NCBI RefSeq assembly: GCF_001194135.2
Contig: NC_068983.1
Coordinates: forward strand, 84,660,338 to 84,724,337
DNA: 64,000 nt
Source of the DNA: Octopus bimaculoides
Lineage: Eukaryota
Reading direction: 5' to 3'
The translations under genes and the position numbers were made by a program. The notes under the pieces were generated by a model. The model was given only the letters and a program-made list of their open reading frames with translations. It was not told where the DNA came from and did no database searches. This document shows positions 6,291 through 40,500 of the stretch, in pieces; positions within the stretch are counted from its first letter, which is position 1, and each line of letters starts with the position of its first letter.

Positions 6291-7797
6291 TATATATATA
6301 NNNNNNNNNNNNNNNNNNNNNNNNNNNNNNNNNNNNNNNNNNNNNNNNNNNNNNNNNNNNNNNNNNNNNNNNNNNNNNNNNNNNNNNNNNNNNNNNNNNN
6401 NNNNNNNNNNNNNNNNNNNNNNNNNNNNNNNNNNNNNNNNNNNNNNNNNNNNNNNNNNNNNNNNNNNNNNNNNNNNNNNNNNNNNNNNNNNNNNNNNNNN
6501 NNNNNNNNNNNNNNNNNNNNNNNNNNNNNNNNNATATATATATTACATATGTATATACCACACACACACATAAATAAAACGAGATAAGATAAGAGAAATA
6601 TCTCTGAGTGGTCAGTGGCATGTATTTGAGAAATTAATTTAATAATAATTGAATTGAATTAAATATTAATTTAATTTGATTATTGAATTTAATATTTTAA
6701 TTAAGTTATTAAGTATGTTATTTTAGAATCTGAGCATATTAAATAACTTACAAGACATTTCGCTTTTTTATTGAAATTATCTCCGCTTCCAGAGAGGATA
6801 GGCAAATTGCTTGGTAGCAATTGGCGCCGCCTCTAAATGAAAATGGAAGGTAATCACAAGGATAAAAATTCTCCAAAACAGACATGCCATTAAGGAAAAT
6901 AGTCTAATTGTTGCAAAATGAGAAGATAACTGTGGACGCAGGTTTCTGCATTAATTGGTGTCATCAGTACAGCAATTGTTTTACTTTATGTTCAGCAGAC
7001 GAAACACTTAGGCATACAGAAAAAAGAACACAGTAATGGCATAAGTCACTTGCATGAATTAAACAAAAATGTGCAAAAAATATATAATGCAATGTGGCCA
7101 GTGCATGTATTTGAACATACACACGAACTCACACTCATAGATACAAACATACACACACACATTTATATGATCGAAGGGAGACAATTCTGGTGATTCTAAT
7201 AAGATTGGGGTTATCTCCATTTGCGTGACACGAAATATATAAATATACATAGGTATTTATTAGAAGTTGTGTACATGGTTATGTGTATACCGAATGGCGT
7301 TCCTTTAAATTAAAAGCTGACATCCATTTGATAAATAGATATTGATAAAATAAATATTGTCAAGTTGAAATAAGTCAAGTTGGAACGGGAGCCCTAGCAC
7401 GGCCGCAGTTTTATAATCGAAGCGAGTAAAGCGATGAAATAATAATAAAAAATCTGGCCTTAAAGCATATTGATATCAAATAATGGTCACTAAAACACTA
7501 AGGTCGATGCACCCAACTATATATACTCCCGTAATAATTGGCTTTGTGCCGGTGATAAAGATATCAGTATCACATAGTGATTAATATTGATAGCAATTAT
7601 CTGAAGTATGATATGAATGTTGTCAGATTTCCAATTCTGTAAATAGCACTGACATTTGTATAATAAATAGGAAAAAGAGAGTCGAGATTATCTGGGGTTG
7701 GTAGGATACGTAAAAACAAACTACCGTACGAAAGGGTAGTGTCTCCCATGACCAAGATACTTAACCTTGCTGTTTCAACAGAGCTTTTAAATGAGTA

Positions 7798-8473: not shown

Positions 8474-8714
8474 NNNNNNNNNNNNNNNNNNNNNNNNNNN
8501 NNNNNNNNNNNNNNNNNNNNNNNNNNNNNNNNNNNNNNNNNNNNNNNNNNNNNNNNNNNNNNNNNNNNNNNNNNNNNNNNNNNNNNNNNNNNNNNNNNNN
8601 NNNNNNNNNNNNNNNNNNNNNNNNNNNNNNNNNNNNNNNNNNNNNNNNNNNNNNNNNNNNNNNNNNNNNNNNNNNNNNNNNNNNNNNNNNNNNNNNNNNN
8701 NNNNNNNNNNNNNN

Positions 8715-10463: not shown

Positions 10464-11731
10464 ATGAAATGTTGTTAACCACATCTTAATTATTTACTTT
10501 CAACTTATAGCAAACTCTTTCTGTGTGTATTTGTATATCTGTCTCTTTGGATCGATCTAAGGAAAAAAAACAAAAAAAACTTAATGACGTTTACTTTACA
10601 AATCTAACACAAAACTGGAATTTAGAATTCTTTTCAAAACGAATAATAAAAGTTGAATCGGTTATGTATGGAAATAAACGGCTTCGTTCATTTAATTAGA
10701 ATACGGTAGATATTTATTAACAGATGAGACACATCTGACATTCTTTCAATCATATTTGTTAGAGGATTCTAAAGCATAACACAATACAACACAACGCAGG
10801 ATTTTAAATTCTCCTCACAACTACAGATGAGAAAACACAAAGAGGAAAATACAAACAAAAACACTGCAAAACGGTTTATCAAATTCATCCTTGAACTGAT
10901 GAATTAATTTGCAAAGAAACCCCATCGCAGTAACATGGCTGCCACGAGTTAAATAAACACAGCGCAACAATTTTTTCAAAACGTTGCCTAGGGCGTGGGA
11001 ATGAGTTTTAGAGATTAGTTATCAATTATTCAAACGTTACCGATATTGTATGTTAAAAAATTGCCAACATAAACTGTTCGACTTGTTGTGACATCAATCA
11101 ACGACGAAACTAAGTCGTGTGCTGTGCATGCATAATTTACACCTTATGCAAAATATCTGACACACAATATCTTACACAACTTTTGTCTTTAAATTTATGC
11201 CCATCTGCACTTTCGTGCACACAGAACACACAGAAATACACACATGCGCAACACAGTACAAATATATACCCGTATTCTCATTAAAAAAAAAAAGACCCTC
11301 AATCATGCACACACGCATACAGACAGACACGAAGTGATTTGCAATTTACTGGACTGATCATATTACCGTTATATTTGATGTATACATAAACACACATATA
11401 CAGGTTTGTTCCAAAGAGCTTTGCGATCACATTACTGTTTTAAACATGAGCTTTACATAAACAGTCACACACACAAACACACAGCACTGCACAACTGCAT
11501 ATATTTAGACATAGAAACGTCTGCTGCAGTAGAAGAACCATTCATAATGTTACTCGTACACTGATACTAACACAGGCATACATAGAAATGCTCTTTCTTC
11601 CTCGGAGAAATTGTCATGATCGTATTCTTAATGTGTGTGTGTGTGTGTACATATGTGTATGAGTACTCATGTATTCACAAAACACAATGTGTGCGTGTGT
11701 GAGCGCACACACGCACGCACACACACACACA

Positions 11732-15382: not shown

Positions 15383-17320
15383 CAGGGAGAGACAGAAAGA
15401 AAGAAGGAAAGAGAGAAGAGAAACAGTATTAGGCAATGACTGATACTATTTCAATTATTCCTGACTCAAAATTTAACTCGTTTATTGTAACTAATTCACA
15501 ACTCGGAGCCAATTCCGGATAGTGATTCAGTTTCATTCTGACTTCATCTGCGAAGTATAGACCAGTGTTACTCAAAGGGTGGGTAGGTCTGTAAAGATTA
15601 AAAAAGGGCAGACAAATGACTATATTTAATACAATTAAGATGGTTTCCAACCTTTTAACTCCCTGGTGAAGGAAAAACAACTACATAGATGAAAATTCTA
15701 TTTCTTCATTCAATTAAGAAAGAAGGGAAAGGGTGTAAACAATTTCACCAATATTCTTGTGGTTGGTGTGCCTGATATTTGCCAGTTTGTCAATCATCAG
15801 TAGAGCTTCACCGTACTTGCAGAAATATTAATAAAAAAAAAACTCTCGAAGCGTATGTTGAAGATTATATACACTGGGTGGGATAGAAAAAGAGGTTTAG
15901 CGAAGGAATTATCCCGAGATCATATCGATTTTATACTAACTTGCTTGTCTTGTAAATTTTATTTTTCATTCAATGGGTCTCCTGATCTTTTTAAAAAGAA
16001 ATTATTATAAGATTATGATATTTTTCATCATTTTATAAATATAAAACGGTTGCAACAAAGACAAAGACAAAGCAACAAAAATTAGATGTGTAAATGTAAC
16101 AGCTGTATAAAAGATGACAGAAAAGCTAATATAAAGAAGGGAGTAAGGGAGCCTATACGTTGTTANNNNNNNNNNTGTCTTCGTGGAAATATAGAAAAGA
16201 TACCATGTGTAGTGTAGCCATAGATTAAAAAAAAAAAAAAATAGAACGGTCATGTCTGGGACACATTTGATCAAAGGTCTGTTCAATTAAGGTGACTTGG
16301 GTACACGCCACCCCAACAATAACAACATCGAAAAATGCAAGCTTATAAAGAAGTTATTTTGTAGTGTCCATAGATTAGCAATTTGTTGGCCTTGATTAAT
16401 AGTTTATCGTGAAATTTTGTAGTTGAACCTTAGATCAGCCTTGATCAAGCAAACCAATGATCAATGGTGTTTGCAACCATGATCAAGCCATCATTTTTTC
16501 CCAGTGCATTTAGGACTATATTATCCTACGCGTCCTCTCCCATCTTTTCATCATTTGCTTACCAGTGTTAAATATTCTTAACGCTTCAATTCTTCGCCGT
16601 CACGTTAAGAAAGCAAATGGTTTCTTCAGTATATTATTATCTAAAGTGCTTACTTGGGCGTTCCTAAAGAATGGAGTCAGAATTTATCTAGTGTGCTAAA
16701 AGCCATAATTTCTACGAATGTGTTTAAGTATCGCTGATTGTGGAAATGCTAAAAAAACAAATAACAAACGCGGTGGTGATTGGAGGAAGAGTTGCCCTTA
16801 CCTCATTTCCGTGATATTTATCAANNNNNNNNNNGCAACAAAAATTAGATGTGTAAATGTAACAGCTGTATAAAAGATGACAGAAAAGCTAATATAAAGA
16901 AGGGAGTAAGGGAGCCTATACGTTGTTACACAACCAGCTAGAAATAGCAGAAATATCAGCCATATTCCTTCATGTCTTCGTGGAAATATAGAAAGGATAC
17001 CATGTGTAGTGTAGCCATAGATTAAAAAAAAAAAAAAAATAGAACGGTCATGTCTGGGACACATTTGATCAAAGGTCTGTTCAATTAAGGTGACTTGGGT
17101 ACACGCCACCCCAACAATAACAACATCGAAAAATGCAAGCTTATAAANNNNNNNNNNNNNNNNNNNNNNNNNNNNNNNNNNNNNNNNNNNNNNNNNNNNN
17201 NNNNNNNNNNNNNNNNNNNNNNNNNNNNNNNNNNNNNNNNNNNNNNNNNNNNNNNNNNNNNNNNNNNNNNNNNNNNNNNNNNNNNNNNNNNNNNNNNNNN
17301 NNNNNNNNNNNNNNNNNNNN

Positions 17321-17535: not shown

Positions 17536-19480
17536 TATTCGCTATATTTCTCCAGGTAAGATGTGGAAATTTCAATTAATTCAAGTAATGAAGTTCTGTT
17601 GTTGCTGTTGTTGTTGTACAGCATTCAGAATATCAGCCCTCAAGTTATTTATCTAACTTAATATCATTGGTTCCTTTGAGTTATTTCCCATAGCTCATTT
17701 TTTCTAATTAGATGAATTCGAAAGCTTCGACGAACTCTAAGGTTTCTTCCTTTAGGAACACAATTGTAAAACACAAGCAATTCACAAACGTGTATGGCAT
17801 CCGGCTGTCGTTGTAACCCTTTTTCAATAAAGCTTTAGGACTTGCCAGTAAATATTTTTTGCATATTGATGATTTAAACGTTATAATGAAAAGAGTGTCA
17901 GGTATGGTTAACATAATATTTAACTGCTGATCAAAAGATGATGTAGAAGCTCTCATTGTGTGGATCAAAATCATTCGAACTTTGACTTTTTTATAGCGAA
18001 ATTTGTGATTTTGGATAGGTTCGTATGCGGTGGGAATTTAGTTACGCAGACCAGTATCAGTGCCCTCGGATTGTTTTAAAACTTCTTTTAGGTATAGTTC
18101 ATCCGGGACTACCTTATCCTATAACCCCACTCATATTTCTTAAGACAGTAGGGTCGTATTTTGAGAGTTTTTAGGTCGCTGTTTCTAGCAGGTTGTGTGA
18201 CCGCATACAGGTCCACTTTGCTTCACATAGGGGTGATTGTTTTTTGTACGTATGTATATGCGTCTCTATATGATATTACTAGTAAAAGTGTGTATAGATA
18301 TGAGTGTGTGTTAGTGCGTATATGAATTTGCATGTTCTATTCAACTTAACCGCTAGAAGTTATGTTTGTTATGAAAGGAGTTTATTGTTAACAACTTGTA
18401 GTTATTAGGTCCTTGTTAACTGTTTGCTGGTAATCGCCGGTAATGGTTTGTTATTAACAACATGTTTAACTGCATGTTGATTTCTTGTGTACACTGTTGT
18501 TGCTGTTCTCGTGCCTCAGATCAGCTCTCATCAAGTAGATCTCCGATCAAAGATGTTTTCAGCCTTGACCCTCCATTTCTTTTCCAAGTACAATGTCCCC
18601 GGACTTTATTACTCTACTTGTCCTATTTTTAGATCGTAGGCTATGCTGTGAGGTTTTGGCTATTTTTTTAAAAGTCCAACGATATAAGGCTCATTGAATC
18701 AAATTGATACTCGTAATTAATTTTTGCTAATACCTTGTTGGAAATAGTTTCTTAATTTTTATTAATAGTTCATGATATTTTAGACACCAATTATACAAGT
18801 ACTAGTGGTAATCAAGAAAGTAAGTTTCAGGCAAGTACGTGTGCGATCTGATTCACTATACCCTCCACCCACCCATACACACCATATCTTAAATTTCTGG
18901 GTTACTTTAAAAACTATTTTATACAGCTTTTTTTTTGTTAATAATTCTATGGTACTAGTATCTTATTAATAGCCAACTGTTTAACTGAAACCATAAGATG
19001 TTTCACTGTTTATTGTTCGGGCTATCATTGATCTGATTAAAATTTCAAGTGGACACGATTTCTTTGACTTTAACAAAATATGTCACGATATACTTCTCAC
19101 CAAGAGCTGATCTCGGCTCTTTAACAACCATGTGGCGAACACTAAAAGATTTCGAGACTAACTTTTGGCGTTCTTGCTCTGTAATTCGGTGTTGATTCCA
19201 AATTGTTGCTATTTAATTTTATTCCATTAATTAAACCCCTGAAGAGAAAAACGCCCCACAAATATCACAATATTCTACTTTATGTTTCCCATAATTCTTG
19301 TGCCTAATCGAAAAGGAATTAATAGTTTTATTGTCCCTACGTTCCTAGCAAGCCAAGTTCACAGAGCATTGTGAAAATGACAATTAATAGGTAGTTTATT
19401 TTCTCATTGAAATATGAAAAAATTTTAATGAATCTTATTTTATATTATGTAATAATCTTTCTTTGATAAAATGTTCTAAA

Positions 19481-19501
19481 TAGATTTTTCATGTCTTTCA
19501 G
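19481..19501 (+). other. 3' splice acceptor of the giant exon (exon starts 19502)
   Basis: tagatttttcatgtctttcAG immediately precedes the switch from AT-rich intron-like DNA to exon-like composition. Confidence 0.65.
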
Positions 19502-19740
19502 ATATTCACCTTTTGGTCTGTACAAGATGACATCAGTGGTAAAAAGACATTTGTTCGTTGGCGATTCGCCACTCACAAATGAGTGAAAACACCAACTCAG
19601 CTCACATACCCGCTTCACATCGCTTATCACCATCTTGCTTATCACCACCTTCATCTTTGGATAATCCAGTCCACGCTACCTCTGACCCGCACTCATCTTT
19701 ATGCAGCATTGCTCACACATCATCCGAAACTGCACTCACT

Positions 19741-22700
19741 ATGGGCAATCAACTTAGCGGAGATGGAAGTTTGAAAAGGAAAAGCAAGAAGAAAAATAAA
19801 AACAAAAACGACGAAAAAAGCAAAAGTGAAACCACTTCAGTACTAGATGAAACTGTTGTCGGTGCGTTTGGTGGATCATCTGTCGATGATACCAGTTCCC
19901 CCAGTAAACGACCGGCCCAGAGCAAGTCTCCTCGGCCTGTAAGGTCGACTTATGATAATGTTAATCAACATGGCTCCAATTCGAACTTATGCTCAAATTC
20001 AGGTCTTTACACTAGTGACCTCTATTTGGACACGGTTAGTCGGCTGGATGTCAGCATGACTACTAGTCAAATGGAAACAACTCCGAGAAATGAAAGATCT
20101 TATCGGTTTGATACTCAGTTAGCTGATGATGTATCGTTTAGTGAAATATCCTTTAATGAATCGGGTTTCATTACACCAGCTTTGAGTACACCTCAAGTGA
20201 GACGTAACGAATTACAACAAATAAAAACCACGACAGACAGTGTCAGCGAATTGGGGAAGGAAATAGAAAGGACAATTTTCGAAAGATTATCAGCTGACGG
20301 GAAGTCGGATGGTAGCAAAATAAAATCCGCAGAAACTCCTCCTCTTCCTAGTAAGCAGGATGCTGAAGAAAATGTTGGTCATGGTGTTGATGAAAAATCA
20401 AAACGACTGGAATACATGAATGAAGGAAAGGCACAAACCGAAGAAAAATGTGCTGTCAGTCAAACTGACATGAAAGCACCCGAAGATAACAGTACTGGTC
20501 TGTCGACTTGTCAAGAACTTACAGCCCCTACTCCCAGTGAAGAAGAGATTTGGTCAAATGACAACAGTAAAGACAAGGAGAAATCTTCTGAAATGATCAA
20601 CAAAGCCGACTGGGAATTGATGGAGAAAGAAAGTAAAATATCAGTTACCGACAATACAACCACCGACACCGAAGAACTGACTGAAGTATCCCAAAGAGAA
20701 GCTCCTGAAAAAGCAGAGCATTCAAAAATAGAGCCGAATCAGAATCATTCAAGCTCTGATGAAACTTTTCAGAACGATTTCGAGCAGGTGAAATCACACA
20801 TTAATGAAGACGTTAAGGTCTCACTCAAAGATAGCGATTATGATGCGCCTGAAAGAGAGGGTGTTAAATCAGAGCAAAATGGGACTGTCGATAAAAATGT
20901 TTGCCCAGAGACTCCAGAACAAGAACAAAAGCTAATACCACCTCCCGATGTTGCTGCAAATCAGAAAGTGGAGGAAATTGTAATGGAGGAACCAGTGCCA
21001 AAAAGCGCCGACGATGAAATTAAACAAGTTAAACAGTCAGTAAATCAATGTTTAAATGAGAAAGAAGTCGAAACAAAGATGATTATCGATGATAAAGCTC
21101 AATTAACTGAAAACTATGATGAAAGTACTCTTTCAAATAAAACCGAAAACGTATGTGAAGCTGAGAAATGTTCTTTGAAGAATATCCAAGAAACCGCTGC
21201 TGCTGTAATCGCAACGAAACCTTCGATCCCTGACGAAATCTTGACCATCTCCGAAGCTGTCCCAGTTGTAAAAAATACATCAGTTAAAGAACTGGAACCT
21301 GTTTGCGAAAAAATTATAGAGTCTTCAAGTGCTTCTTTTGCAGAGCGATCAAAGATTCTAGTTCATCATCCTGTTTTAAGTAATGACCAAGAAAAGGAAA
21401 CCGAACGAATCAAGACCAGTTGCGATGAGAGCTCGAAAAAGTATATTCATGAACCAGACGTAGAAGCAAACAGTATCAAAAGTGAATCCGATAAACATTC
21501 TAAAGACCCGGCTACACAAGAAATAGAAGAAATTCCTCAGGGAGCTATTTTGGAAACCGAAAGTAGTTTAGAATGTTCTGTCACTCAAACAAGTGATACA
21601 ACTGATGATAAAAAAGAAACCTCAGAAAACGAACAAAATATTTCGAAAATCAAAACAAAAAAAGGACGCAAAAGAAAAAGAAAGAAAAAATCGAGTTTAG
21701 GAAACGAAAGTTCGGCAAATGCTTCTGCGAGTGAGAGCCAAAGTGTTAGCGAAGTGACAGAAATAGAGGATAACTGTGATCTAGCTATCTCTAGATCCAG
21801 AGACAGTGATCTCACAAAAGAGGATGAAGAGAACGGTAATGAAATAAAATCTGTTGCTAGCACCCCTGATAGTGACAGCCCCGTATTTCTGCATCAATCC
21901 TCTGTCATAGAAAATACTAATTATTTAAAGGACGAAAGCTCAACATCAGATAAGTCAAACACTGTATCTAGTAGTGAAATTCAGAAAAAAGAACAAGCAA
22001 ATCAGAAGGACATCGATTCAAAACCACATCCTTTTGTAGACGTAAGTTGTTCAGTTGGAGCGTTGCATTCAACCACTGATATTGTGAGTGATGAATCTAC
22101 TCCCACGAATGAACGTCAGAATGAAATAAGAGCTTTCTATATTCCAAATAAAGAACAGAAAATTAAGTCAGATTCTTCACATGGAGAAGGAACCAAAGAC
22201 GACAATAAACGACTTAATGACCAAGTAGAAAACGTTCATACTACCAACGAAAGGACAGAAAAAGAAGATCAACAACTGGAAGATGAAAGTAAAAATATTA
22301 GTCAACTGAATGTTCAGTGTGAAGATGAAAATGAAACACATCAATGTGAAGATGAAAACGAAAACGTGTTCGATAAAGATGAAGATGCAACTGTTGCTAT
22401 TCCACATTGTCGAAATGGGACCAAAAACATTGTTGAAGAAACTGTTAACCCAAGACTATCAACTGCCTCTGAAGAACTCAACGAAATTATGGAAAATTCA
22501 AATAAAGTTGAAAAGAGAAGTGATCAAAATCGGCCACATAGTTACCCTAAAGAAGGTGAAGATCTGCGGGACAGAAATGAAAACCACTCAGCAACTTCTC
22601 AGGTAAGTTTAGAATCAAATAACTCCAGTAAAAAGAATTACAAATCTGGTCATAAGTCTCTGACTGATATCGACCACAACTTACCGGAAACATTACCTGA

Positions 22701-23445
22701 ACTTGCTGATCTAAAGAACTTTCTCGATTACATAAAACTAGGGGAAGATCAAAAATTATCAGAATCACCTTTTCCTTATAAGTGTGAAACTAATCGCTCA
22801 TCTCCATCTGAAAACGCGAGTAGTCGGCGTCTTTCACGTATTTCGCCGGCAGTGACCGATAGATCCGTGACCGAATCCGATATTGATATTTCAGAACAAC
22901 GCGATGATATCAGTACAGACAGCAACATCTTCGCCGATGATGAAGATGAATCAGCCTCTGAATTACTTTTCACTAAAACTTACACAGAACCAGACAAAGG
23001 GGGAGAAGTGCTGGTCAGTTGTACAGTCGTTAATACAGCTGCTGATGATGACAGTGATGACTTTTGGGCAGAGCATTCGGCGAGTGAAGAAGTTTACAGA
23101 CAAATACAAAGCTCTACCAAGGTCGTAACTACAGTTTTTGACAATGCTCGCCTACAAATGCAGGACATTCATACACATCTACAAAATCTCCGTTTACAAA
23201 TGGAGAACCTTCAAGAATCATTGGACAATGCCTCTATTTTTAGCCATGAGTACTACCCTGCCGACGATACTCCCGAGTCGTCCCAAGATTTCTATCCTTT
23301 AGACAAAGGATTCATTGTTTCACAAGAATATTTCCCGAAGCACATTGCATCGGTGACAACCGAAGAATATTCTCCTGTGGAGATTGGACCCGTATTAACT
23401 GAAGAATATTATTCATCACATTTTGGTAAACCACCATTTTTGTAA
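19741..23445 (+). CDS. Giant single-exon ORF, 1234 aa acidic low-complexity protein; candidate myristoylated scaffold (AKAP/MARCKS-like architecture), orthologue unknown
   Basis: Uninterrupted frame 19558-23445 in AT-rich, repeat-free DNA; an in-frame TAA at 19540-19542 bounds it upstream. ATG 19741 has strong context (actATGG) and gives MGNQLS; the upstream in-frame ATG 19579 (caaATGA) is weak. E/D/S/K/T-rich composition. Confidence 0.88.
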   Translation: MGNQLSGDGSLKRKSKKKNKNKNDEKSKSETTSVLDETVVGAFGGSSVDDTSSPSKRPAQSKSPRPVRSTYDNVNQHGSNSNLCSNSGLYTSDLYLDTVSRLDVSMTTSQMETTPRNERSYRFDTQLADDVSFSEISFNESGFITPALSTPQVRRNELQQIKTTTDSVSELGKEIERTIFERLSADGKSDGSKIKSAETPPLPSKQDAEENVGHGVDEKSKRLEYMNEGKAQTEEKCAVSQTDMKAPEDNSTGLSTCQELTAPTPSEEEIWSNDNSKDKEKSSEMINKADWELMEKESKISVTDNTTTDTEELTEVSQREAPEKAEHSKIEPNQNHSSSDETFQNDFEQVKSHINEDVKVSLKDSDYDAPEREGVKSEQNGTVDKNVCPETPEQEQKLIPPPDVAANQKVEEIVMEEPVPKSADDEIKQVKQSVNQCLNEKEVETKMIIDDKAQLTENYDESTLSNKTENVCEAEKCSLKNIQETAAAVIATKPSIPDEILTISEAVPVVKNTSVKELEPVCEKIIESSSASFAERSKILVHHPVLSNDQEKETERIKTSCDESSKKYIHEPDVEANSIKSESDKHSKDPATQEIEEIPQGAILETESSLECSVTQTSDTTDDKKETSENEQNISKIKTKKGRKRKRKKKSSLGNESSANASASESQSVSEVTEIEDNCDLAISRSRDSDLTKEDEENGNEIKSVASTPDSDSPVFLHQSSVIENTNYLKDESSTSDKSNTVSSSEIQKKEQANQKDIDSKPHPFVDVSCSVGALHSTTDIVSDESTPTNERQNEIRAFYIPNKEQKIKSDSSHGEGTKDDNKRLNDQVENVHTTNERTEKEDQQLEDESKNISQLNVQCEDENETHQCEDENENVFDKDEDATVAIPHCRNGTKNIVEETVNPRLSTASEELNEIMENSNKVEKRSDQNRPHSYPKEGEDLRDRNENHSATSQVSLESNNSSKKNYKSGHKSLTDIDHNLPETLPELADLKNFLDYIKLGEDQKLSESPFPYKCETNRSSPSENASSRRLSRISPAVTDRSVTESDIDISEQRDDISTDSNIFADDEDESASELLFTKTYTEPDKGGEVLVSCTVVNTAADDDSDDFWAEHSASEEVYRQIQSSTKVVTTVFDNARLQMQDIHTHLQNLRLQMENLQESLDNASIFSHEYYPADDTPESSQDFYPLDKGFIVSQEYFPKHIASVTTEEYSPVEIGPVLTEEYYSSHFGKPPFL
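22600..22608 (+). other. Internal consensus 5' splice donor within the giant ORF (phase 0, after ...ATSQ)
   Basis: CAG|GTAAGT, perfect consensus; CAG is an in-frame codon. Confidence 0.5.
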
Positions 23446-23579
23446 TATATATGTATGTATACACATATATGTAATATATATATATGTATGTATACACATA
23501 TACATACATGCAAACATGCATACACGCATCGTTTTGAAAGAGGTATCGAAGCTTTCATGCACATAATAAGCGGTATCAA

Positions 23580-23585
23580 AATAAA
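23580..23585 (+). promoter_or_regulatory. Candidate polyadenylation signal of the giant exon
   Basis: AATAAA 135 nt after the stop; TG-rich catgttttgtt about 55 nt downstream. Confidence 0.5.
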
Positions 23586-23731
23586 GATGACACAAAAATA
23601 GTCTCAAGTGATGTAGACAATATTTAAATGATCATTGCCATGTTTTGTTAAACTATATATCTTAGACTAGGCAGTTTAGGTTTTGTTGTTCGTTCTTTAT
23701 ACTTGATTGACCACTGTCCTACTCTCTCTAG

Positions 23732-23764
23732 AACCTGAAGACACCTGAACTTGAACTGTAAATG
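23732..23764 (+). other. Candidate 33-nt micro-exon ending in ATG
   Basis: Acceptor ccactgtcctactctctctAG, donor ATG|GTAAGT; stops in all three frames before the terminal ATG. Confidence 0.55.
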
Positions 23765-24559
23765 GTAAGTTCTCGTCAAATAGTTTTTATGCGACTCAAG
23801 AGTAAAACAAAACAGTTATACAAATTACAGCCACGAAGAAAATGATGATAATAATGACGAGGATGATGATAGTAAGAATAATGCAAGAGATAAAAATGAT
23901 AGTAGTATTATTTAAACCCCAGACTCCTAAAAAGGAACACGAATACAATAGGCACAAAGAAACAAAACGTGGGTTTGTTACATCAGTTTTGTTAAAACTA
24001 TAAAACGATTATAATGATAAGGAAAGTTATTGTGAAGAAAATGGTGGTAATTGTTAGAGAAATGATAATGATGAAGACAATAATCATTACATTTTTAGTA
24101 ATCAAGAAATATTTTAAATTGACTCAAAACTAATTACTAATTCGAAAATTTAGTACCTTAGATTAAGAAGACAAAAACACCTACAATATTGATAACGCGA
24201 TACACTCAAAACGAAATTCAGGGGAGATTTGTATAACTATAGTAAGTAACATAAGTAATTTAATATCCGTTTAAGTAGTAAGGCGGTAGGGTAGGCGGAA
24301 GTGAATTAGCATAGCCTTCATTCACTCTATGAAAAGTCAAGGGAAGTAATTGTTACTGACAGATTAAAAAAAATGGTGCAACTGGGGAAAAAACAATTTT
24401 GTTACATTTTCTATTAATGTGAATACAAATCACTCAAAAACGGAGACTATAAGCAACTATGATATCAACTAACAATGGACTACATTTTTATCCTAATTTA
24501 TTTGTATTTAGTTTTGTTTAGAATGCTTTTGGTTTTCTGAGAATTAGTTACATTTATAG

Positions 24560-25040
24560 ATTTCTGAGTAGAACATTGACGATAGCATTTTGCTAAATAC
24601 AACTTAGAATTTGGTTTTTGTAGTTCTTCTTTAATCCCCAAGTCACCCCTGATCAAGTGGACCCATGATCAAATTTATTCTAGTCATGACTATCCTGTAT
24701 TCTATTTCAAACAAAGTACACATACGATTACATTATTCAACGTAACCCTCTCTCTTTTTAAGAGATACAACGTAATACGAAGCATATTTGACTGTTATTT
24801 TAAGCAAATCGAGCAATCTTGTCAAGCTTCTCTTGCTGGTTCAGTGTACCCCTTGTTTTTTTAAGCATCTGGGTATTGTTGCATAGCTCCCGGTCAGCTC
24901 TGAGTGAGAAAACATGACCAAAGGCATTGCATCTGTGACCAACTCATTTTGCATTTCGCGACTTCATTTTTTAGTGTGTTATGCTTTATTTAAATCAAGA
25001 TTGTGGTTTGAAATAGATTTGGCTGCTATTTCTGTAAAAC
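24560..25040. repeat. Decayed interspersed repeat family B
   Basis: Motif gacctgctagaaatagcagccaaat or its reverse complement recurs near 12020, 16930, 18180, 25020, 25605, 34910 and 35410. Confidence 0.5.
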
Positions 25041-25289
25041 TCCTTCATTTACTCCATTGAGAATTTCCCGTTATATATATTTTCCCCATTATATAAATAT
25101 ATATATATAATGATTATATAATACATATAATCACATGTATATGTATATACATGCATATGCATAGCGTATCTGTGTGCGTGTGTATGAGTGAGAGAGTGTG
25201 AGAAAGAGAGAGTGAAAGAAAGAGAGAGAGTAGCTAGCTAGCTAGCTAGCTAGCTAGCTAGCTAGATAGATAGATAGATAGAGAGAGAG

Positions 25290-27297: not shown

Positions 27298-28257
27298 ATC
27301 TTTGTGGTTTTCGTCACCGTTTACAATTATCTTAAAAAGAAAAAAAAATTAATGTATCATATAGATGTAATTTTTGACGCTGAATCCAATTTGTCATTCA
27401 TTTGTTCAAGAAAAAATTTATATAAAANNNNNNNNNNNNNNNNNNNNNNNNNNNNNNNNNNNNNNNNNNNNNNNNNNNNNNNNNNNNNNNNNNNNNNNNN
27501 NNNNNNNNNNNNNNNNNNNNNNNNNNNNNNNNNNNNNNNNNNNNNNNNNNNNNNNNNNNNNNNNNNNNNNNNNNNNNNNNNNNNNNNNNNNNNNNNNNNN
27601 NNNNNNNNNNNNNNNNNNNNNNNNNNNNNNNNNCGAGCAAATTAAATAATTAAAAAAGCTAGGAACAAACAAACAAACCAACAGGAGTTGCTAGAAAAAA
27701 CAGTCAAGACATTGTTTGAAACAGACATTTATTAGTTAAAATATTCAAGAACGAAAGTTTGCAATACATACGCGCGCACACACACACGCCCCCCCCCACA
27801 CACAAGCATTCGCATAACTCTACACACAGGGTTGAAACGCCCCCACTACCAGTTTGCCACCACCCCTTCCTTCCTTATTCATCTATCACCCCTTCCTTTC
27901 TCATTCATATGTTGTGACGGAGAAAAACACAAGAGTATTATAATAGCAGAAGATTATCATTCTCCTTGTGCGCATACGCAACATCCTTGGTTACTATGGA
28001 AACAGAGTTTTTCGCCGCGGTGATCATCTTTGGTTACTATGGAAACAGAGTTTTTCGCCACGGTGATGTGTAAACTATTCGCTTCTGATCGGTTTAAATA
28101 CCCAAATTTTGCAAATTTTAAAAAGCTAATAACTTTTTAATTATGGATTTATCTGAAATATGAATTTCATTTTCTTAATTGTATAAAACTTAATCCATAT
28201 ACATAATTTGAAAACACTTGGAACAATATTGTAAACATTGACGAAAACCACAAAGAT
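27298..28257. mobile_element. Non-autonomous DNA transposon (MITE) with 30-bp TIRs, spanning a gap
   Basis: atctttgtggttttcgtcaccgtttacaat (27298-27327) versus the reverse complement of 28228-28257, 28/30 identical. Confidence 0.8.
27982..28067 (+). repeat. 43-bp tandem duplication, each unit carrying an RFX X-box
   Basis: catc(c/t)ttggttactatggaaacagagtttttcgcc(g/a)cggtgat x2; GTTACTATGGAAAC at 27990-28003 and 28033-28046. Confidence 0.85.
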
Positions 28258-29860: not shown

Positions 29861-30534
29861 GACAAACACAGACACACAAACATGTACACACACATACATA
29901 CATACATACATACATACATACATANNNNNNNNNNNNNNNNNNNNNNNNNNNNNNNNNNNNNNNNNNNNNNNNNNNNNNNNNNNNNNNNNNNNNNNNNNNN
30001 NNNNNNNNNNNNNNNNNNNNNNNNNNNNNNNNNNNNNNNNNNNNNNNNNNNNNNNNNNNNNNNNNNNNNNNNNNNNNNNNNNNNNNNNNNNNNNNNNNNN
30101 NNNNNNNNNNNNNNNNNNNNNNNNNNNNNNNNNNNNNNNNNNNNNNNNNNNNNNNNNNNNNNNNNNNNNNNNNNNNNNNNNNNNNNNNNNNNNNNNNNNN
30201 NNNNNNNNNNNNNNNNNNNNNNNNNNNNNNNNNNNNNNNNNNNNNNNNNNNNNNNNNNNNNNNNNNNNNNNNNNNNNNNNNNNNNNNNNNNNNNNNNNNN
30301 NNNNNNNNNNNNNNNNNNNNNNNNNNNNNNNNNNNNNNNNNNNNNNNNNNNNNNNNNNNNNNNNNNNNNNNNNNNNNNNNNNNNNNNNNNNNNNNNNNNN
30401 NNNNNNNNNNNNNNNNNNNNNNNNNNNNNNNNNNNNNNNNATATATATATATATATATATATAGATAGATATATGCATATATCCATACATATATGTAAAT
30501 ACCTACATCTATATGTATACATACATGCATATAT

Positions 30535-37210: not shown

Positions 37211-38565
37211 TTTATATTCTTTCTGGAATTTGAACTTATCAAACTCTTTGTATCAACACTCCTATGGGTTAATTGTTGCTGATGCAGACCATCATCAGTT
37301 TCCTTGGCTTTCCGATTTTGCCCTATTGGTAACTAGCAAGATTCATTTAATAAAAATACTAGAGCCAACTTATATTCATTCTTCTCTCACAATGGAGTTG
37401 CCCGAGAGATACTCATTGAACTTTCAATGTATTTATACGATTTGTGTGTTTAGTTCCGAATGAACCCTCAATGAGTAACCTTATTATCTGGTTTTGATTC
37501 CTGATTCCTGTTACAACCATTTCACCTCATCTGTGTCACTAATGCTCTTGAAATAAATCGCCAGAAAATTATAAGTACCCCACTTTTCTCCCCTCCATAA
37601 ATGTTAGATTTTGTGTTTATAAGAATAGAATTTTCAGAGAAGAATTAATCAAGTTAGTTTCCTATAAGCTTCTCCAGATGCAGTTTCAAGATTCGAACAC
37701 AGAACTTCAAACCAAATTTCCTCACTTAAATTATACAATAACAGGGGGTTCTTGCAACGGAGTATTTTTTATTTAAGCTTTTGTAACTTTAATCGAATTG
37801 GGCCACAGAAAGGGTTAAACAAGTTTCTTATTTCGATGTGAGAGTTAAATACATTTAGAGTTATGAATATTTAGAGACATCAATGACTCAGCCTAGGATC
37901 CTTGAAATGTTGCCNNNNNNNNNNNNNNNNNNNNNNNNNNNNNNNNNNNNNNNNNNNNNNNNNNNNNNNNNNNNNNNNNNNNNNNNNNNNNNNNNNNNNN
38001 NNNNNNNNNNNNNNNNNNNNNNNNNNNNNNNNNNNNNNNNNNNNNNNNNNNNNNNNNNNNNNNNNNNNNNNNNNNNNNNNNNNNNNNNNNNNNNNNNNNN
38101 NNNNNNNNNNNNNNNNNNNNNNNNNNNNNNNNNNNNNNNNNNNNNNNNNNNNNNNNNNNNNNNNNNNNNNNNNNNNNNNNNNNNNNNNNNNNNNNNNNNN
38201 NNNNNNNNNNNNNNNNNNNNNNNNNNNNNNNNNNNNNNNNNNNNNNNNNNNNNNNNNNNNNNNNNNNNNNNNNNNNNNNNNNNNNNNNNNNNNNNNNNNN
38301 NNNNNNNNNCCAACACGATATCACTGATGTAACCGTGAAGTATTAGAAATCTTTGAAAATATTCTTCTAAAGATTTTATTCTCACATATATTCTTTCCTC
38401 TCCTTTGCGTCTATTTTTATCTCGCGAACTTCAAGGGTGTTGGTCGTAATACCTTTTGTAGTTGCGGATGCATAACTTGCGACACGTTCCATTTCTCCTC
38501 CTTTTCCCACTTCATCCATATTGGGGAAGAAACAATTTTCAAAAACAGGCACACACAACGACAGA

Positions 38566-38639: not shown

Positions 38640-40500
38640 ATCCCGGTTGACACGCGCGGGGAAACCTACAACAATATATAATAACAGTGTGTAACAATTT
38701 AACTCACGTTCTAAAGAAATCAACACCAACACCCAAGATGGCTTGCTTCTGACTAGTGTTTGATGGTTGCCCTATTTTTATAGGGGGTTGATGGCTCAAA
38801 TTAGCATATGTTTTGAATAGGATTTGATTAGTAGAGAATAGTCACATGATTAGTCTTAGAAATTTTTGGAGGTTCCCCGCTACGTCTCTGTGTTAGTATC
38901 AAGTGACGATGTTTGGCGTCGTAAGTTAAGGCTGACACGGTTGACTGAACATGTACAAACAATCAATGCTCTGTTTTCTGTCAAGTGTTTGTAGAGAATG
39001 AACACATGATTAGGTTTATAACCTTTTGTATGTTTTCCGCTACGTCTGTGTTAGTTTCCCATAACAGCATATTTTGCGCCTAAAAAGAAGGCCGACACGG
39101 ATGAGTGATCATGTTTATTTACAATCAAGGCACTCCAAATTTAATCTGTCTGGTGGGACAGTGGACAGGAGTCGTTTGTATTTAGTCCAGTGGCTAAAGT
39201 TTAGGTTGTTAACTGTGTAGGTTCCTCATGTTAAGTGGCAGAATGAGTTCGTGTGTGAATAGTTATTTGTGTCTGTACTCTGTTAAAGCTTGTTAAGTCT
39301 TGGTTTGTATTTTCGTATGAAAGTATTTTCTTTGTTTATCCGTGCTTCATCTGTGGTATTCTCTTAACATAGTTAAAGTGGGAATACTTGGAATTCAGGG
39401 GACTTATTTTTTGCACGTGCTTGTGTCCACTCAGTGGAATCTGTCTAGTACTGGGGTCTCGTATTTGTTGTCGGTGAATGGTCAGTTTATTTCTTAGAGT
39501 GAGCTTTGTTTGACCTATGTAATCTTCATTACATCCTTAACATTTTATAGCATATATCTAATTCCTTGAAGAACATGGAAGGTGATTTTTACAGTAAAAA
39601 TATGGCCTGATTAGCTGTTGGTGTAGGAATTGTAGAAGGTAATTTAGCATTTGTGAGGAATTTTTTGAGGTACATTGATTGTCTTTTACTTTTGATTATT
39701 TTGTATATTTCGAATGCTTGTTTCATTCTTGGGTCTTGTTTTAGTAATGGAATGTTCTGGTAGATAATATTGTAAACCTTTGTGTTTCTTGGGTTGTGTG
39801 TTGTAATAAAGGGTAGAGTATTGGATGTATCTGGAGCGTTTTCCGTAGGTCTTGGATATTTATTGCTTTGGCATGTTCTATTCCGTTGTCTATCAACATT
39901 AATTGATATTGTCTTTCAAGTAGCACTTGTTTTAGTTCCTGGAGTCTTTTATTGTGAGTTTCAGGGTTTGAGAAAATTGTGCAGATTCTTCTTGCTAGAT
40001 TAAAGGGAATATTATTCTTCGTGTGTTTGAGATGGCATGAGAAGTACAGTAGGTATTGTTTAGAATCTGTTTGTAGTGAATATCTGTTCCAATATTTTTA
40101 TCTCCTTTGATGATTAGTAAATCCAGGAATGGTAGCTGAGTTTTACTGTATTCCATGGTATAGTTAATATTATTGTTTATGCTGTTGATTAGCTTTTTGA
40201 AATCTATAAATTGTTCAAATGTGTGTGTCCAAAGGATTTGGCAGTCATCTAAGTAACGTTTCCAGTTTTCTAGTAGATATTTGTGGAAGTTCAAACCATA
40301 TTTCAATTTAGATTGTTCATATATCTGGACCTCCATGTATGCCATGACTAGATTTGCGTAAGTCGGAGCAACTTTCGTGCCCATCGCAGTACCAGATATT
40401 TGTTTGTTAATACTGCCATCGAAGTAAAAAAAGTTGTTTTCGAGGATAAAAGCCACGTTTTTCTATCTCAACTTTTTGAAAATCAGTGTAAACTGTGAAA
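38640..40500 (-). mobile_element. 5'-truncated Penelope-like element: RT, thumb and GIY-YIG end (stop at 39283-39285) plus 3' region
   Basis: QISGTAMGTKVAPTYANL, WKRYLDD, LPFLD, then after a frameshift TDSKQYLLYFSCH..NIPFNLARRIC and the C-terminal RINKENTFIRKYKPRLNKL*. Confidence 0.92.

What the first reader, a model, noticed from the sequence alone, without database searches (positions are those of the whole stretch)
19741..23445. Orphan 1234-aa giant-exon protein with a myristoyl plus polybasic membrane anchor: candidate cephalopod MARCKS/gravin-like scaffold
Seen: the best-context ATG gives MGNQLSGDGSLKRKSKKKNKNK (G2, S6, then 8 basic residues in 11 with an embedded Ser), followed by ~1000 aa of acidic low-complexity sequence in one exon. 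Known: MGxxxS plus a basic cluster is the two-signal membrane anchor of Src, MARCKS, BASP1, AKAP12-alpha and Drosophila DAKAP200, and Ser phosphorylation in such clusters can release them from membranes. Inference: a membrane-tethered disordered signalling scaffold with no orthologue I recognise.
Basis: partly seen in the sequence, partly recalled or inferred. Interest (0 to 1): 0.8.

Follow-up and report, generated by a model that had tools for sequence, protein, structure and literature searches.

The report
Mollusc-wide myristoyl-motif disordered scaffold gene
This is a real octopus gene for a long, acidic, mostly unstructured protein whose conserved Met-Gly start motif and basic patch look like a fatty-acid membrane anchor. 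It is not an orphan: it belongs to an unstudied family found in every mollusc class sampled, and in octopus the anchor can form only if translation starts at the second AUG.

Summary
There is one 1295-codon ORF (19558-23445, +) with in-frame ATGs at 19579 (MSENTN...) and 19741 (MGNQLSGDGSLKRKSKKKNKNK...). The product is acidic (pI 4.6) and predicted disordered.

"Orphan" is wrong. An exhaustive profile search found 34 clusters, and every one that carries an organism name is a mollusc (cephalopods, gastropods, bivalves, a chiton). All are uncharacterised, and none has a Pfam, PDB or fold match.

The Met-Gly-Asn motif plus basic cluster marks the family. In Gigantopelta, Mytilus (mRNA) and Sinanodonta a stop codon lies 3-6 codons upstream, so the protein starts there.

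Cephalopods, Patella and many bivalves also keep an upstream AUG and an N-terminal extension. That extension contains no Met in 2632 residues (39 expected). The upstream AUG is always in weak context and the MGN AUG in strong context. A conserved uORF ends 7 nt past the first AUG.

The best reading is two proteoforms, with the shorter one myristoylated and membrane-tethered. Conserved Y[DE]NV motifs, an RRxS/acidic phospho-cluster, an NLS-like cluster and a C-terminal helix suggest a docking scaffold.

It resembles MARCKS and gravin in how it may work, but it is not a homologue of either. Lipidation and start-site use remain untested.

The parts
19487..19501 (+). Polypyrimidine tract and AG splice acceptor (AG at 19500-19501). 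The giant exon begins at 19502.
   Evidence: the window, O. sinensis, L005, Argonauta and squid genomic L003 all have Y-tract+AG here. Squid mRNA contigs L008/L009/L016 replace it with a conserved exon-1 sequence (..gaagggttttcg|ATATTTATC).
19502..19578 (+). 5'UTR portion of the giant exon (77 nt).
   Evidence: The in-frame stop at 19540-19542 closes the frame upstream of AUG1.
19527..19586 (+). Upstream ORF of 19 codons (MTSVVKRHLFVGDSPLTNE). Its stop (TGA, 19584-19586) overlaps codons 2-3 of the main ORF.
   Evidence: a uORF ending 7 nt past AUG1 is present in all five cephalopods; the same arrangement occurs in bivalve contig L020.
19579..19740 (+). AUG1 (weak context, c at -3 and a at +4) and a 54-codon N-terminal extension (MSENTNSAH...) with no internal Met.
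   Evidence: dN/dS is 0.5-0.66. Identity to squids is 19-26%, against 69-73% for the next 26 residues.
19701..19757 (+). The only other ATG between AUG1 and AUG2. It is out of frame, in weak context, and opens an 18-codon ORF that ends 16 nt past AUG2.
19741..19761 (+). AUG2 (strong context, a at -3 and g at +4) and the N-myristoylation-type motif M-G-N-Q-L-S-G.
   Evidence: Met-Gly-Asn is conserved across the family.
19774..19806 (+). Basic cluster KRKSKKKNKNK (aa 12-22 of the short form).
   Evidence: A basic cluster follows the motif in most family members, and eleven sequences (ten bivalve-type, six of them named bivalves or clustered with one, plus the unionid Sinanodonta) add a Cys-Cys.
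19951..19962 (+). Y71-D-N-V, the family's recurrent Y[DE]N[VIL] motif. It fits the Grb2-type SH2 docking consensus pYxN.
   Evidence: 37 occurrences in 22 of 31 family proteins, against 1.1 (max 5) in shuffles. STYDNVN is conserved in the four cephalopod proteins counted.
20164..20289 (+). Conserved N-terminal motifs GFITPALSTPQV (20164-20199) and ELGKEIERTIFERL (20248-20289).
   Evidence: The motifs are shared with gastropods (GY.TP...TP and ELG+.IER.I), with the chiton (the ELG helix motif only) and with the oyster (the GF.TP motif only).
21652..21690 (+). Internal basic cluster KTKKGRKRKRKKK (aa 638-650), which resembles a nuclear localisation signal.
   Evidence: It aligns across cephalopods and Patella.
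22681..22737 (+). Short predicted helix LPETLPELADLKNFLDYIK.
   Evidence: helix at residues 18-34 of the modelled fragment, pLDDT about 50-70. Conserved as I-P-E-I-E-E-T-F-x-E-L in gastropods.
22825..22962 (+). Basophilic-kinase-type site RRLSRISP, followed by an acidic Ser/Thr cluster TESDIDISEQRDDISTDSNIFADDEDES.
   Evidence: R, S, TES, D, SE, D and ADDE are invariant across 16 diverse members.
22963..23079 (+). Conserved LLFTKTYTE...VSCTVVNT (weakly predicted beta-hairpin) and the DSDDFW motif.
23080..23229 (+). Long C-terminal alpha-helix (aa 1114-1163), probably a coiled coil. This is the most conserved part of the family.
   Evidence: ten-residue block means 73-96 across the helix, 86-96 in its core. 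(F, A, M, I, L, LR and QM invariant). The weak Aip3p_Bud6_N Pfam hits fall here. dN/dS is 0.01-0.07.
23245..23445 (+). Cephalopod-specific Tyr-rich acidic tail (HEYYP, QDFYP, QEYFP, EEYSP, EEYYSS) and the stop codon (23443-23445).
   Evidence: Non-cephalopod members end earlier, at ..R.[IV]T[DE].
23580..23585 (+). AATAAA, a candidate poly(A) signal 135 nt after the stop codon.
   Evidence: AATAAAGAT and the flanking 3'UTR block are conserved from Octopus to Argonauta. Alignable similarity to Argonauta ends at about 23588.

Best explanation
The window carries the octopus member of a mollusc-restricted, uncharacterised gene family. The gene has a non-coding first exon (not located) and one giant exon from 19502 that holds the whole coding sequence. 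The protein is about 1,250 aa long, acidic and mostly disordered. It is built from short conserved motifs plus a C-terminal helix that probably forms a coiled coil.

The family hallmark is Met-Gly-Asn-x-x-[S/G/T] followed by a basic cluster (plus Cys-Cys in many bivalves). This is the two-signal pattern of co-translational N-myristoylation plus electrostatic or palmitoyl membrane binding.

In cephalopods the mRNA offers two in-frame starts. AUG1 (19579) is in weak context and is overlapped by the stop of a conserved uORF. AUG2 (19741) is in strong context.

I infer that ribosomes reaching AUG2, by leaky scanning or by reinitiation after the uORF, make the short form. Its Gly2 is then myristoylated and it sits on the inner face of membranes. 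AUG1 makes a longer form that cannot be lipidated.

Once tethered, the protein would act as a docking scaffold. It would dimerise through the C-terminal helix, and the Y[DE]NV motif would recruit a Grb2/Drk-type SH2 adaptor after tyrosine phosphorylation. The RRxS site and acidic Ser/Thr cluster, together with Ser residues in or beside the basic clusters, would offer phospho-control, possibly including release from the membrane.

What is shown: gene structure, conservation, motif statistics and start-codon architecture. What is inferred: use of AUG2 in octopus, lipidation, membrane location and partners.
For: Real gene: the ORF is unique in the window. The coding sequence is a single exon in six species. 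dN/dS is 0.01-0.07 at the C-terminus. Spliced mRNA contigs from two squid species carry the full ORF, and for one of them the protein is indexed in 42 blocks of the collection, mostly on 5-10 kb contigs.

Family: 34 clusters with E from 1e-113 to 1e-6. Every named member is a mollusc.

Anchor motif: MG[NT]xx[STGA] is present in 32 of 40 sequences examined, and all 32 also pass the remaining PS00008 positions. Most are followed by a net-basic segment. An in-frame stop lies 3-6 codons upstream of the MGN ATG in Gigantopelta, a Mytilus mRNA contig and Sinanodonta, so it is the true N-terminus there. Conservation jumps at this Met, from 19-26% identity before it to 69-73% after it (octopus against squids).

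Use of AUG2: 19 members with N-extensions of 46-305 aa contain no Met in 2632 residues, against 39 expected. AUG1 has a pyrimidine at -3 and A at +4 in 7 of 7 species with DNA in hand. AUG2 has a purine at -3 and G at +4 in 7 of 7. A uORF ending 7 nt past AUG1 is conserved in five cephalopods and one bivalve.

Precedent: in Arabidopsis JASON, leaky scanning yields a long Golgi form and a short plasma-membrane form whose N-terminus resembles MGCxxS/T/C (PMC5853252). Human NAA40 proteoforms made by alternative initiation differ in myristoylation (PMC8037211).

Docking role: Y[DE]N[VIL] occurs 37 times against 1.1 expected. RRxS, the acidic cluster and the helix are invariant. The helix is modelled at pLDDT 86-96 in its core.
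Against: No direct evidence shows initiation at 19741, or lipidation, in any species.

AUG1, its open frame and its first residues (MS[DE]...) are conserved from cephalopods to Patella and bivalves. The long, non-lipidatable form is therefore real and could be the main or only product in octopus. RefSeq models for O. sinensis and Argonauta start there.

Out-of-frame ATGs between AUG1 and AUG2 are not depleted: one in each cephalopod, 7 in Patella, 11 in bivalve L020. This argues against simple leaky scanning in species with long extensions. In octopus, the ORF opened at 19701 runs past AUG2.

The Met-free statistic ignores shared ancestry among the 19 proteins.

No octopus transcript was available; the three Logan contigs closest to the window are genomic.

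Only one Y[DE]NV motif survives in cephalopods, and several gastropods have none. The SH2-docking idea rests on a consensus recalled from the literature, not on a test.

The internal KRKRKRKKK cluster could make this a nuclear protein.
Confidence: 0.5

Rival explanations
1. There is only one product, starting at AUG1 (19579). In cephalopods the MGNQLSG motif is always internal and is never myristoylated. Its conservation reflects another role for this basic segment, or inheritance from ancestors that started there.
For: AUG1, the open 47-54-codon frame and the MS[DE] start are conserved in all five cephalopods and recur in Patella, Haliotis and many bivalves. The annotated models start at AUG1. 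An out-of-frame ATG lies between the two starts.
Against: AUG1 is in weak context and is overlapped by a uORF stop in every cephalopod, while AUG2 is in strong context. The Met itself is present in all 32 sequences that carry the motif, and no other Met occurs in 2632 extension residues. The extension evolves almost neutrally (dN/dS 0.5-0.66), whereas the residues from the MGN Met onward are highly conserved. The motif is the proven start in three other lineages.
Confidence: 0.25
2. The protein is mainly a nuclear or membrane-to-nucleus signalling factor. The KTKKGRKRKRKKK cluster acts as an NLS, the acidic disordered body as a transcription-regulating or chromatin-binding region, and phosphorylation releases it from the membrane. 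This would be analogous to Aplysia CAMAP or vertebrate Jacob/NSMF. It is compatible with the anchor but changes the main function.
For: The NLS-like cluster is conserved in cephalopods and Patella. An RRxS site is conserved. The sequence is long and acidic. CAMAP is described as plasma-membrane associated, PKA-regulated and nucleus-translocating in a mollusc (review PMC2546398).
Against: No DNA-binding or transcription-related domain is detected. The Aplysia family member has no RRxS at the CAMAP Ser148 position, and the CAMAP sequence could not be obtained, so no homology is shown. Basic clusters of this kind also bind acidic lipids.
Confidence: 0.15
3. It is a divergent orthologue of MARCKS/MARCKS-like, BASP1 or AKAP12/gravin (DAKAP200).
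For: It shares only the general pattern: MGxxxS, a basic cluster and an acidic disordered body.
Against: No Pfam hit to MARCKS, BASP1, the AKAP12 WSK motif or RII-binding families in this protein or in seven relatives. No PDB sequence hit. The internal basic cluster lacks the Phe/Ser pattern of the MARCKS effector domain. A regex for the RII-binding helix gives one hit, against 0.5 expected by chance. The exhaustive search with the C-terminal profile recovered nothing that is identifiably outside Mollusca.
Confidence: 0.02
4. It is not a functional gene: a chance ORF, a pseudogene or a transposon-derived ORF.
For: None, beyond the absence of any known domain.
Against: A 1295-codon ORF in 37% G+C DNA. 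Strong purifying selection. Orthologues across the phylum with the same single-exon coding structure. Spliced mRNAs in squids.
Confidence: 0.01

Closest known systems
MARCKS / MARCKSL1 / BASP1 (myristoyl-electrostatic-switch proteins)
   Same: An N-terminal MGxxxS-type motif, a basic cluster containing Ser, and an acidic, unfolded body. The idea that phosphorylation in the basic patch can release the protein from the membrane also carries over.
   Different: No sequence homology. The protein is 4-5 times longer. Its basic cluster adjoins the lipid site and has no Phe residues. It has a conserved C-terminal helix and other motifs that MARCKS and BASP1 lack. In cephalopods the motif sits behind an upstream AUG.
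AKAP12/gravin-alpha and Drosophila DAKAP200
   Same: A very long, acidic, disordered scaffold with an N-terminal myristoylation motif and polybasic membrane-binding regions. Lipidated and non-lipidated isoforms come from one gene.
   Different: No WSK or RII-binding domains are detected, and there is no significant amphipathic AKAP helix. To my knowledge, AKAP12 isoforms arise from alternative promoters and first exons. Here the two starts lie in one exon of one mRNA.
FRS2/SNT and other lipid-anchored docking proteins (LAT/PAG type)
   Same: A lipid anchor plus pYxN-type (YENV/YDNV) candidate Grb2-binding motifs scattered along a disordered chain.
   Different: No PTB domain and no transmembrane segment. 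Only one such motif remains in cephalopods. Tyrosine phosphorylation is untested.
Arabidopsis JASON (and human NAA40 proteoforms)
   Same: Two in-frame AUGs in one mRNA. In JASON the downstream start exposes an MG...S/T/C motif and sends the short form to the plasma membrane, while the long form goes elsewhere (PMC5853252). NAA40 proteoforms differ in myristoylation (PMC8037211).
   Different: These proteins are unrelated to this one. In NAA40 it is the long form that is lipidated. Here, start usage is inferred only from sequence.
uORF-controlled choice of downstream start (C/EBP alpha/beta type; from my own knowledge)
   Same: A short uORF close to the first AUG, together with a downstream in-frame AUG, gives N-terminally different proteoforms.
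   Different: Here the uORF stop overlaps AUG1 by 7 nt, and an out-of-frame ATG lies between the two starts. No functional data exist.
Aplysia CAMAP (apCAM-associated protein)
   Same: A mollusc protein described as membrane-associated, PKA-regulated and able to move to the nucleus (PMC2546398). This family likewise combines an anchor, an RRxS site and an NLS-like cluster.
   Different: No sequence comparison was possible. The Aplysia family member lacks an RRxS at residue 148. This remains a lead only.

Membership tests
Mollusc MGN-start / C-terminal-helix family (unnamed; includes O. sinensis LOC115209215) | Significant match to the C-terminal profile (RRS...TESDLDISEQRDD..ADDE...LLFTKTYTE...SCT..N...helix F..AR.QM.DI..HLQ.LR.QME) | tested here: met
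   The window protein seeds the profile. Cephalopod relatives score E = 1e-110 to 1e-113, and other molluscs reach down to 1e-6.
Mollusc MGN-start / C-terminal-helix family | Met-Gly-[Asn/Thr]-x-x-[S/G/T/A] followed by a basic cluster, either at or shortly after the annotated start | tested here: met
   In the window this is MGNQLSGDGSLKRKSKKKNKNK at 19741.
Mollusc MGN-start / C-terminal-helix family | Entire coding sequence in one exon | tested here: met
N-myristoyltransferase substrates (co-translational) | Gly at position 2 of the nascent chain, i.e. translation starts at the Met before it | tested here: inconclusive
   True if AUG2 (19741) is used. Start contexts, the uORF and the Met-free extension favour its use. 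However, AUG1 is conserved, and no initiation data were available.
N-myristoyltransferase substrates (co-translational) | Sequence rules for residues 2-7 (PROSITE PS00008: G-{EDRKHPFYW}-x(2)-[STAGCN]-{P}) and a hydrophilic or basic follow-on | tested here: met
   GNQLSG passes, as do all 32 family N-termini that carry the motif. Position 6 was part of the search pattern, so only positions 3 and 7 count as independent checks.
N-myristoyltransferase substrates (co-translational) | Covalent myristate on Gly2 | not testable with these tools
   This needs alkyne- or azido-myristate labelling, or mass spectrometry.
MARCKS family (Pfam PF02063) | Sequence homology to the MARCKS profile, including the MH2 and effector domains | tested here: not met
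   no hit even at E <= 1 for the window protein, and none at E <= 0.01 for seven relatives.
MARCKS family | Central effector domain: a Lys-rich stretch with interspersed Phe and PKC-site Ser residues | tested here: not met
   The internal cluster KTKKGRKRKRKKKSS has no Phe and resembles a classical NLS.
AKAP12/gravin, DAKAP200 | WSK motifs and an RII-binding amphipathic helix | tested here: not met
   (no PF03832 or PF10522 hit). In one search the helix regex gives one hit (STKVVTTVFDNA), against 0.5 expected by chance.
FRS2/SNT docking proteins | N-terminal PTB domain | tested here: not met
   no PTB/IRS-type domain.
FRS2/SNT docking proteins | Multiple pYxN Grb2-binding sites | tested here: inconclusive
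   Y[DE]N[VIL] is strongly enriched in the family (37 against 1.1), but the octopus protein has only one. Phosphorylation and binding are untested.
AIP3/Bud6-SRCIN1-SKT coiled-coil proteins | Pfam Aip3p_Bud6_N (PF23153) at or above the gathering score | tested here: not met
   Scores are 17.6 and 20.7 bits against a cutoff of 27, seen in only 2 of 8 proteins, and both hits lie on the coiled-coil helix. This is most likely generic coiled-coil similarity.

The most novel reading that the evidence does not exclude
The family is a phylum-specific signalling device with translational control built in. A uORF that ends inside the first codons of the main ORF, a deliberately weak AUG1 and an N-terminal extension kept free of Met would let the cell set the ratio of two forms. 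One is a soluble or nuclear long form; the other is a myristoylated, membrane-tethered short form. The tethered form would dock SH2 adaptors and could be released towards the nucleus by phosphorylation. That would make it a mollusc-specific membrane-to-nucleus scaffold, possibly relevant to neuronal plasticity in cephalopods and Aplysia.
Probability: 0.15. Interest if true: 0.65.

Novelty: new variant of a known kind. Interest (0 to 1): 0.42.

Why it matters
If the reading is right, molluscs have their own large, lipid-anchored, disordered docking protein, with no detectable relative in other phyla. It has been kept for the several hundred million years since cephalopods, gastropods, bivalves and chitons diverged. 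Proteins of this design (MARCKS, BASP1, gravin, FRS2) organise signalling at the inner membrane face in vertebrates.

The gene is also a clean natural example of a lipid-anchor motif hidden behind an upstream AUG, with several independent sequence signatures of dual initiation. That makes it directly testable with standard reporters.

It has practical value for annotation too. Current RefSeq names for relatives ("futsch", "serine-rich adhesin for platelets-like", "FK506-binding protein 5-like") appear to be low-complexity artefacts, given that no domain supports them, and the longest-ORF start may hide the functional N-terminus.

Tried and rejected
- Word-indexed protein search with alignments. 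A2 returned nothing at all, not even the self-hits. A3 returned only two fragments. I treat these as limits of the index, not as evidence. The exhaustive HMMER search is the basis for the family claim.
- PDB sequence searches. The C-terminal profile gave only coiled-coil noise (haemagglutinin HA2, flagellin, E >= 0.03). The full protein gave no hit at E <= 1.
- AlphaFold2 on the C-terminal 211 aa with 16 sequences: mean pLDDT 57, with only the long helix confident. Foldseek against PDB gave nothing below E = 2. The viral library and a model of the N-terminal region were not run.
- Pfam. Only sub-threshold Aip3p_Bud6_N and THOC7 hits, all on the helix. Rejected as generic coiled-coil similarity.
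- Logan contigs L005-L007, which I first took for octopus transcripts. They are colinear with the window through the intron (19088-25109) and end in a TA microsatellite, so they are genomic.
- Locating exon 1. Squid exon-1 sequence finds nothing in the window or within 10 kb upstream in the squid genomic contig. The window also has assembly gaps upstream (for example 17148-17320).
- CAMAP identity. The original paper is not held, and Aplysia P0031 has no RRxS near residue 148. It stays an untested analogy.
- AKAP RII-helix regex: no enrichment.
- Literature search for LOC115209215, and for mollusc myristoyl/polybasic proteins: nothing relevant.

Full report
**The observation.** The window is AT-rich (about 34% G+C), repeat-rich, gapped animal DNA. 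It holds exactly one long ORF, 19558-23445 on the + strand. An in-frame stop at 19540-19542 closes the frame just inside the exon. Two in-frame ATGs follow, at 19579 (MSENTNSAH..., 1288 aa) and 19741 (MGNQLSGDGSLKRKSKKKNKNKN..., 1234 aa). The protein has pI 4.6, 20% Asp+Glu, 21% Ser+Thr and GRAVY -1.06. All twelve full 100-residue blocks lie on the disordered side of the charge-hydropathy boundary. Block entropy is 3.55-4.0 bits, so "composition-biased and disordered" is more accurate than "low-complexity".

**It is a real, expressed, spliced gene.** The closest relative is Octopus sinensis LOC115209215, at 95% identity. dN/dS between the window and three other octopods is as follows:
- C-terminal 270 codons: 0.01-0.07.
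- First 230 codons after the MGN Met: 0.16-0.22 in the two more distant comparisons, and 0.58 (on 14 substitutions) against O. sinensis.
- Middle of the protein: about 0.4.
- The 54 codons between the two ATGs: 0.5-0.66.

The coding sequence is one uninterrupted exon in O. sinensis, Argonauta, a squid genomic contig, Patella, Gigantopelta and Sinanodonta.

All five cephalopod genomic sequences read polypyrimidine-AG|ATATT[CT]A.C. Logan contigs from two squid species (L008/L009 and L016) carry a different, mutually conserved sequence (..GAAGGGTTTTCG|ATATTTATC) up to exactly that point. Those contigs are therefore spliced mRNAs with a non-coding first exon. For one of these squid species the protein is indexed in 42 blocks of the collection, mostly on 5-10 kb contigs.

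The three Logan contigs nearest to the window (L005-7) run straight through the intron, so they are genomic. I therefore have no octopus transcript.

**It is not an orphan.** A profile of the C-terminal 200 residues, run without a word index against 1.84 billion cluster representatives, found 34 clusters with E from 1e-113 to 1e-6. Every member that carries an organism name is a mollusc:
- Cephalopods: Octopus, Argonauta.
- Gastropods: Patella, Haliotis, Gigantopelta, Littorina, Nucella, Pomacea, Batillaria, Physella, Biomphalaria, Aplysia, Candidula.
- Bivalves: Mytilus, Ostrea, Pinctada, Sinanodonta, Mercenaria, Mactra, Mya.
- A chiton: Liolophura.

All are "uncharacterized" or carry names such as "futsch" or "serine-rich adhesin" that no detected domain supports. 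Nothing reaches a Pfam threshold. No PDB sequence matches. The only confidently modelled element is a 50-residue C-terminal helix, and it has no informative fold match. At this level of sensitivity the family is restricted to Mollusca and is undescribed. Literature searches found nothing on it.

**The anchor motif marks the family.** Thirty-two of the 40 sequences examined contain Met-Gly-[Asn/Thr]-x-x-[Ser/Gly/Thr/Ala], and most of the rest are fragments. All 32 also satisfy the remaining positions of PROSITE PS00008, and most are followed by a net-basic stretch. Eleven sequences, ten bivalve-type and the unionid Sinanodonta, add a Cys-Cys next to a KKK run, which could be a palmitoylation site.

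In Gigantopelta, in a Mytilus mRNA contig and in Sinanodonta, an in-frame stop lies 3-6 codons upstream of this ATG, and the Mytilus leader has stops in all three frames. There the protein really does begin Met-Gly. In octopus-squid comparisons, identity jumps from 19-26% in the 53 residues before the Met to 69-73% in the 26 residues from the Met onward.

**The complication is that there are two starts.** Cephalopods, Patella, Haliotis, the chiton and many bivalves keep an upstream in-frame AUG and an open extension of 46-305 codons. Its first residues are recognisably conserved, for example MS[DE]x[ST][DE]..V in Patella and Haliotis and MS[DE]..DV..VV.P in several bivalves. A 266-codon open frame in Patella cannot be chance. 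The long form is therefore real and probably ancestral. Four sequence features suggest the second AUG is used as well:
1. The 19 extensions total 2632 residues and contain no Met, where the Met frequency of the rest of these proteins (1.48%) predicts 39. This figure is not corrected for shared ancestry.
2. In all seven species with DNA in hand, AUG1 has a pyrimidine at -3 and A at +4, while AUG2 has a purine at -3 and G at +4.
3. A uORF of 17-19 codons in the exon-2 leader (window 19527-19586) ends 7 nt past the A of AUG1 in all five cephalopods and in a bivalve contig. Squid mRNAs have 5-7 upstream ATGs, and a second conserved uORF ends on the ATGA of AUG1. Ribosomes translating these uORFs cannot start at AUG1, but they could resume scanning toward AUG2, 155 nt downstream.
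4. In Patella and in the bivalve contig, every out-of-frame ORF between the two AUGs stops before AUG2.

Against simple leaky scanning, out-of-frame ATGs are not depleted, and in octopus the ORF opened at 19701 overlaps AUG2.

The principle has precedent. In Arabidopsis JASON, leaky scanning gives a long Golgi form and a short plasma-membrane form with an MGCxxS/T/C-like N-terminus (PMC5853252). Human NAA40 proteoforms differ in myristoylation (PMC8037211).

**Other conserved parts.**
- Y[DE]N[VIL] occurs 37 times in 22 of 31 proteins, against 1.1 (maximum 5) in shuffles. In octopus it is Y71 in RSTYDNVNQ, conserved in the four cephalopod proteins counted. From my own knowledge, pY-x-N, and YENV in particular, is the Grb2 SH2 consensus found in FAK, SHP2, LAT and FRS2. 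I treat this as a lead, not a test.
- The N-terminal third carries GF.TP...TP and ELG+.IER.I.E motifs shared with gastropods; the chiton has the second and the oyster the first.
- An internal KTKKGRKRKRKKK cluster (aa 638-650) is shared with Patella and resembles an NLS.
- The C-terminal module contains RRxS, then an invariant acidic Ser/Thr cluster (TESDLDISEQRDD.STDS..ADDE), then LLFTKTYTE...SCT..N, and then the helix F..AR.QM.DI..HLQ.LR.QME.
- Cephalopods add a Tyr-rich acidic tail beyond the ancestral ..R.[IV]T[DE] C-terminus.

**Mechanism, and how sure I am.** The best-supported reading (about 0.5) has two proteoforms. The AUG2 form is N-myristoylated and held on acidic membranes by the adjacent basic cluster. 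There it acts as a long disordered docking scaffold that pairs through its C-terminal helix and is controlled by phosphorylation. The AUG1 form cannot be lipidated.
- Shown: gene structure, purifying selection, family distribution, motif conservation and statistics, and start-codon architecture.
- Inferred: initiation at 19741 in octopus, lipidation, localisation, partners and dimerisation.

The rivals are:
- AUG1-only translation, with a never-exposed motif (0.25).
- A mainly nuclear or membrane-to-nucleus role like that described for Aplysia CAMAP (0.15; PMC2546398). A check of the Aplysia member gave no support for identity with CAMAP.
- Orthology to MARCKS or gravin (0.02).
- Not a gene at all (0.01).

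**Comparison and verdict.** In working principle the closest things are MARCKS/BASP1, AKAP12-alpha/DAKAP200 and FRS2-type lipid-anchored docking proteins. It is a member of none of them, because every defining domain that could be tested was absent. I rate it a new variant of a known kind: an undescribed, phylum-restricted family built on the myristoyl-plus-basic design, with an unusually clear conserved dual-start arrangement. "Orphan" is wrong, "MARCKS/gravin-like" is analogy only, and the anchor depends on the unproven use of AUG2. Interest is moderate (0.42).

Noticed in passing
window 19527-19586: A 19-codon uORF whose TGA stop overlaps codons 2-3 of the main ORF (A ATG AGT GA). The same arrangement (uORF ending 7 nt past AUG1) is conserved in five cephalopods and in bivalve contig L020. 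The need to keep this stop (codon 2 ending in T, codon 3 starting GA or AA) may partly explain why the long form always begins M-S-[D/E/N].
   Followed up: partly
L008 424-537 and L016 359-469 (squid mRNA contigs): A second uORF of 36-37 codons spans the exon 1-exon 2 junction. Its peptide is conserved between the two squids (..KLKKRRVFDIYLWPVRDD..), and it ends on the ATGA of AUG1. In Octopus the same frame is closed early.
   Followed up: no
window ~10880-11190 (aligned to L002 6375-6641): A non-coding block of about 290 nt, 72% identical between Octopus and Argonauta even though synonymous sites are near saturation. It lies 8.3 kb (window) or 3.3 kb (Argonauta) upstream of the giant exon and contains TGCATGCATAATT and TTATGCAAAATAT. 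It could be the promoter, exon 1 or an enhancer of this gene. Squid exon 1 does not match it.
   Followed up: partly
window 23446-23530; L002 13715-13810: A TA/TG microsatellite begins directly after the stop codon. In Argonauta it has expanded to a long (TA)n run, while the 3'UTR block just downstream (ATCGTTTTGA...TTTCATGCACATAATAAG...AATAAAGAT) is conserved.
   Followed up: partly
window 23245-23442: The cephalopod-only C-terminal extension contains five acidic-aromatic motifs (HEYYP, QDFYP, QEYFP, EEYSP, EEYYSS). Other molluscs end at ..R.[IV]T[DE], which aligns with GPVLTE inside this tail. The motifs could be tyrosine-kinase substrate sites.
   Followed up: no
window 39995-40456 (-): A 153-aa ORF with a weak reverse-transcriptase match (RVT_1, E = 0.0018, below the Pfam cutoff). 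It is probably a decayed retroelement fragment.
   Followed up: partly
window 421-1303, 6301-6533, 8474-8714, 17148-17320, 27428-27633, 29925-30440, 37915-38309, 49697-50259, 58662-58888: Runs of N (assembly gaps), several of the largest flanked by CA/TG or TA microsatellites, so the window comes from a draft assembly. The gaps at 16166-17320 lie upstream of the gene and could hide exon 1.
   Followed up: no
P0017-P0020, P0022-P0025, P0027, P0028 (bivalve family members): In bivalves the MGN motif is followed within 45 residues by a conserved T-K-C-C-E-I-P-K-K-K segment. This Cys-Cys next to a basic run is a possible palmitoylation site that would take the place of the immediate polybasic cluster seen in cephalopods.
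   Followed up: no
P0009, P0022, P0031, P0040 (RefSeq names): The automated names given to family members ('serine-rich adhesin for platelets-like', 'FK506-binding protein 5-like', 'microtubule-associated protein futsch', 'platelet binding protein GspB-like') are not supported by any domain hit among the relatives scanned, and they look like artefacts of compositional bias.
   Followed up: partly
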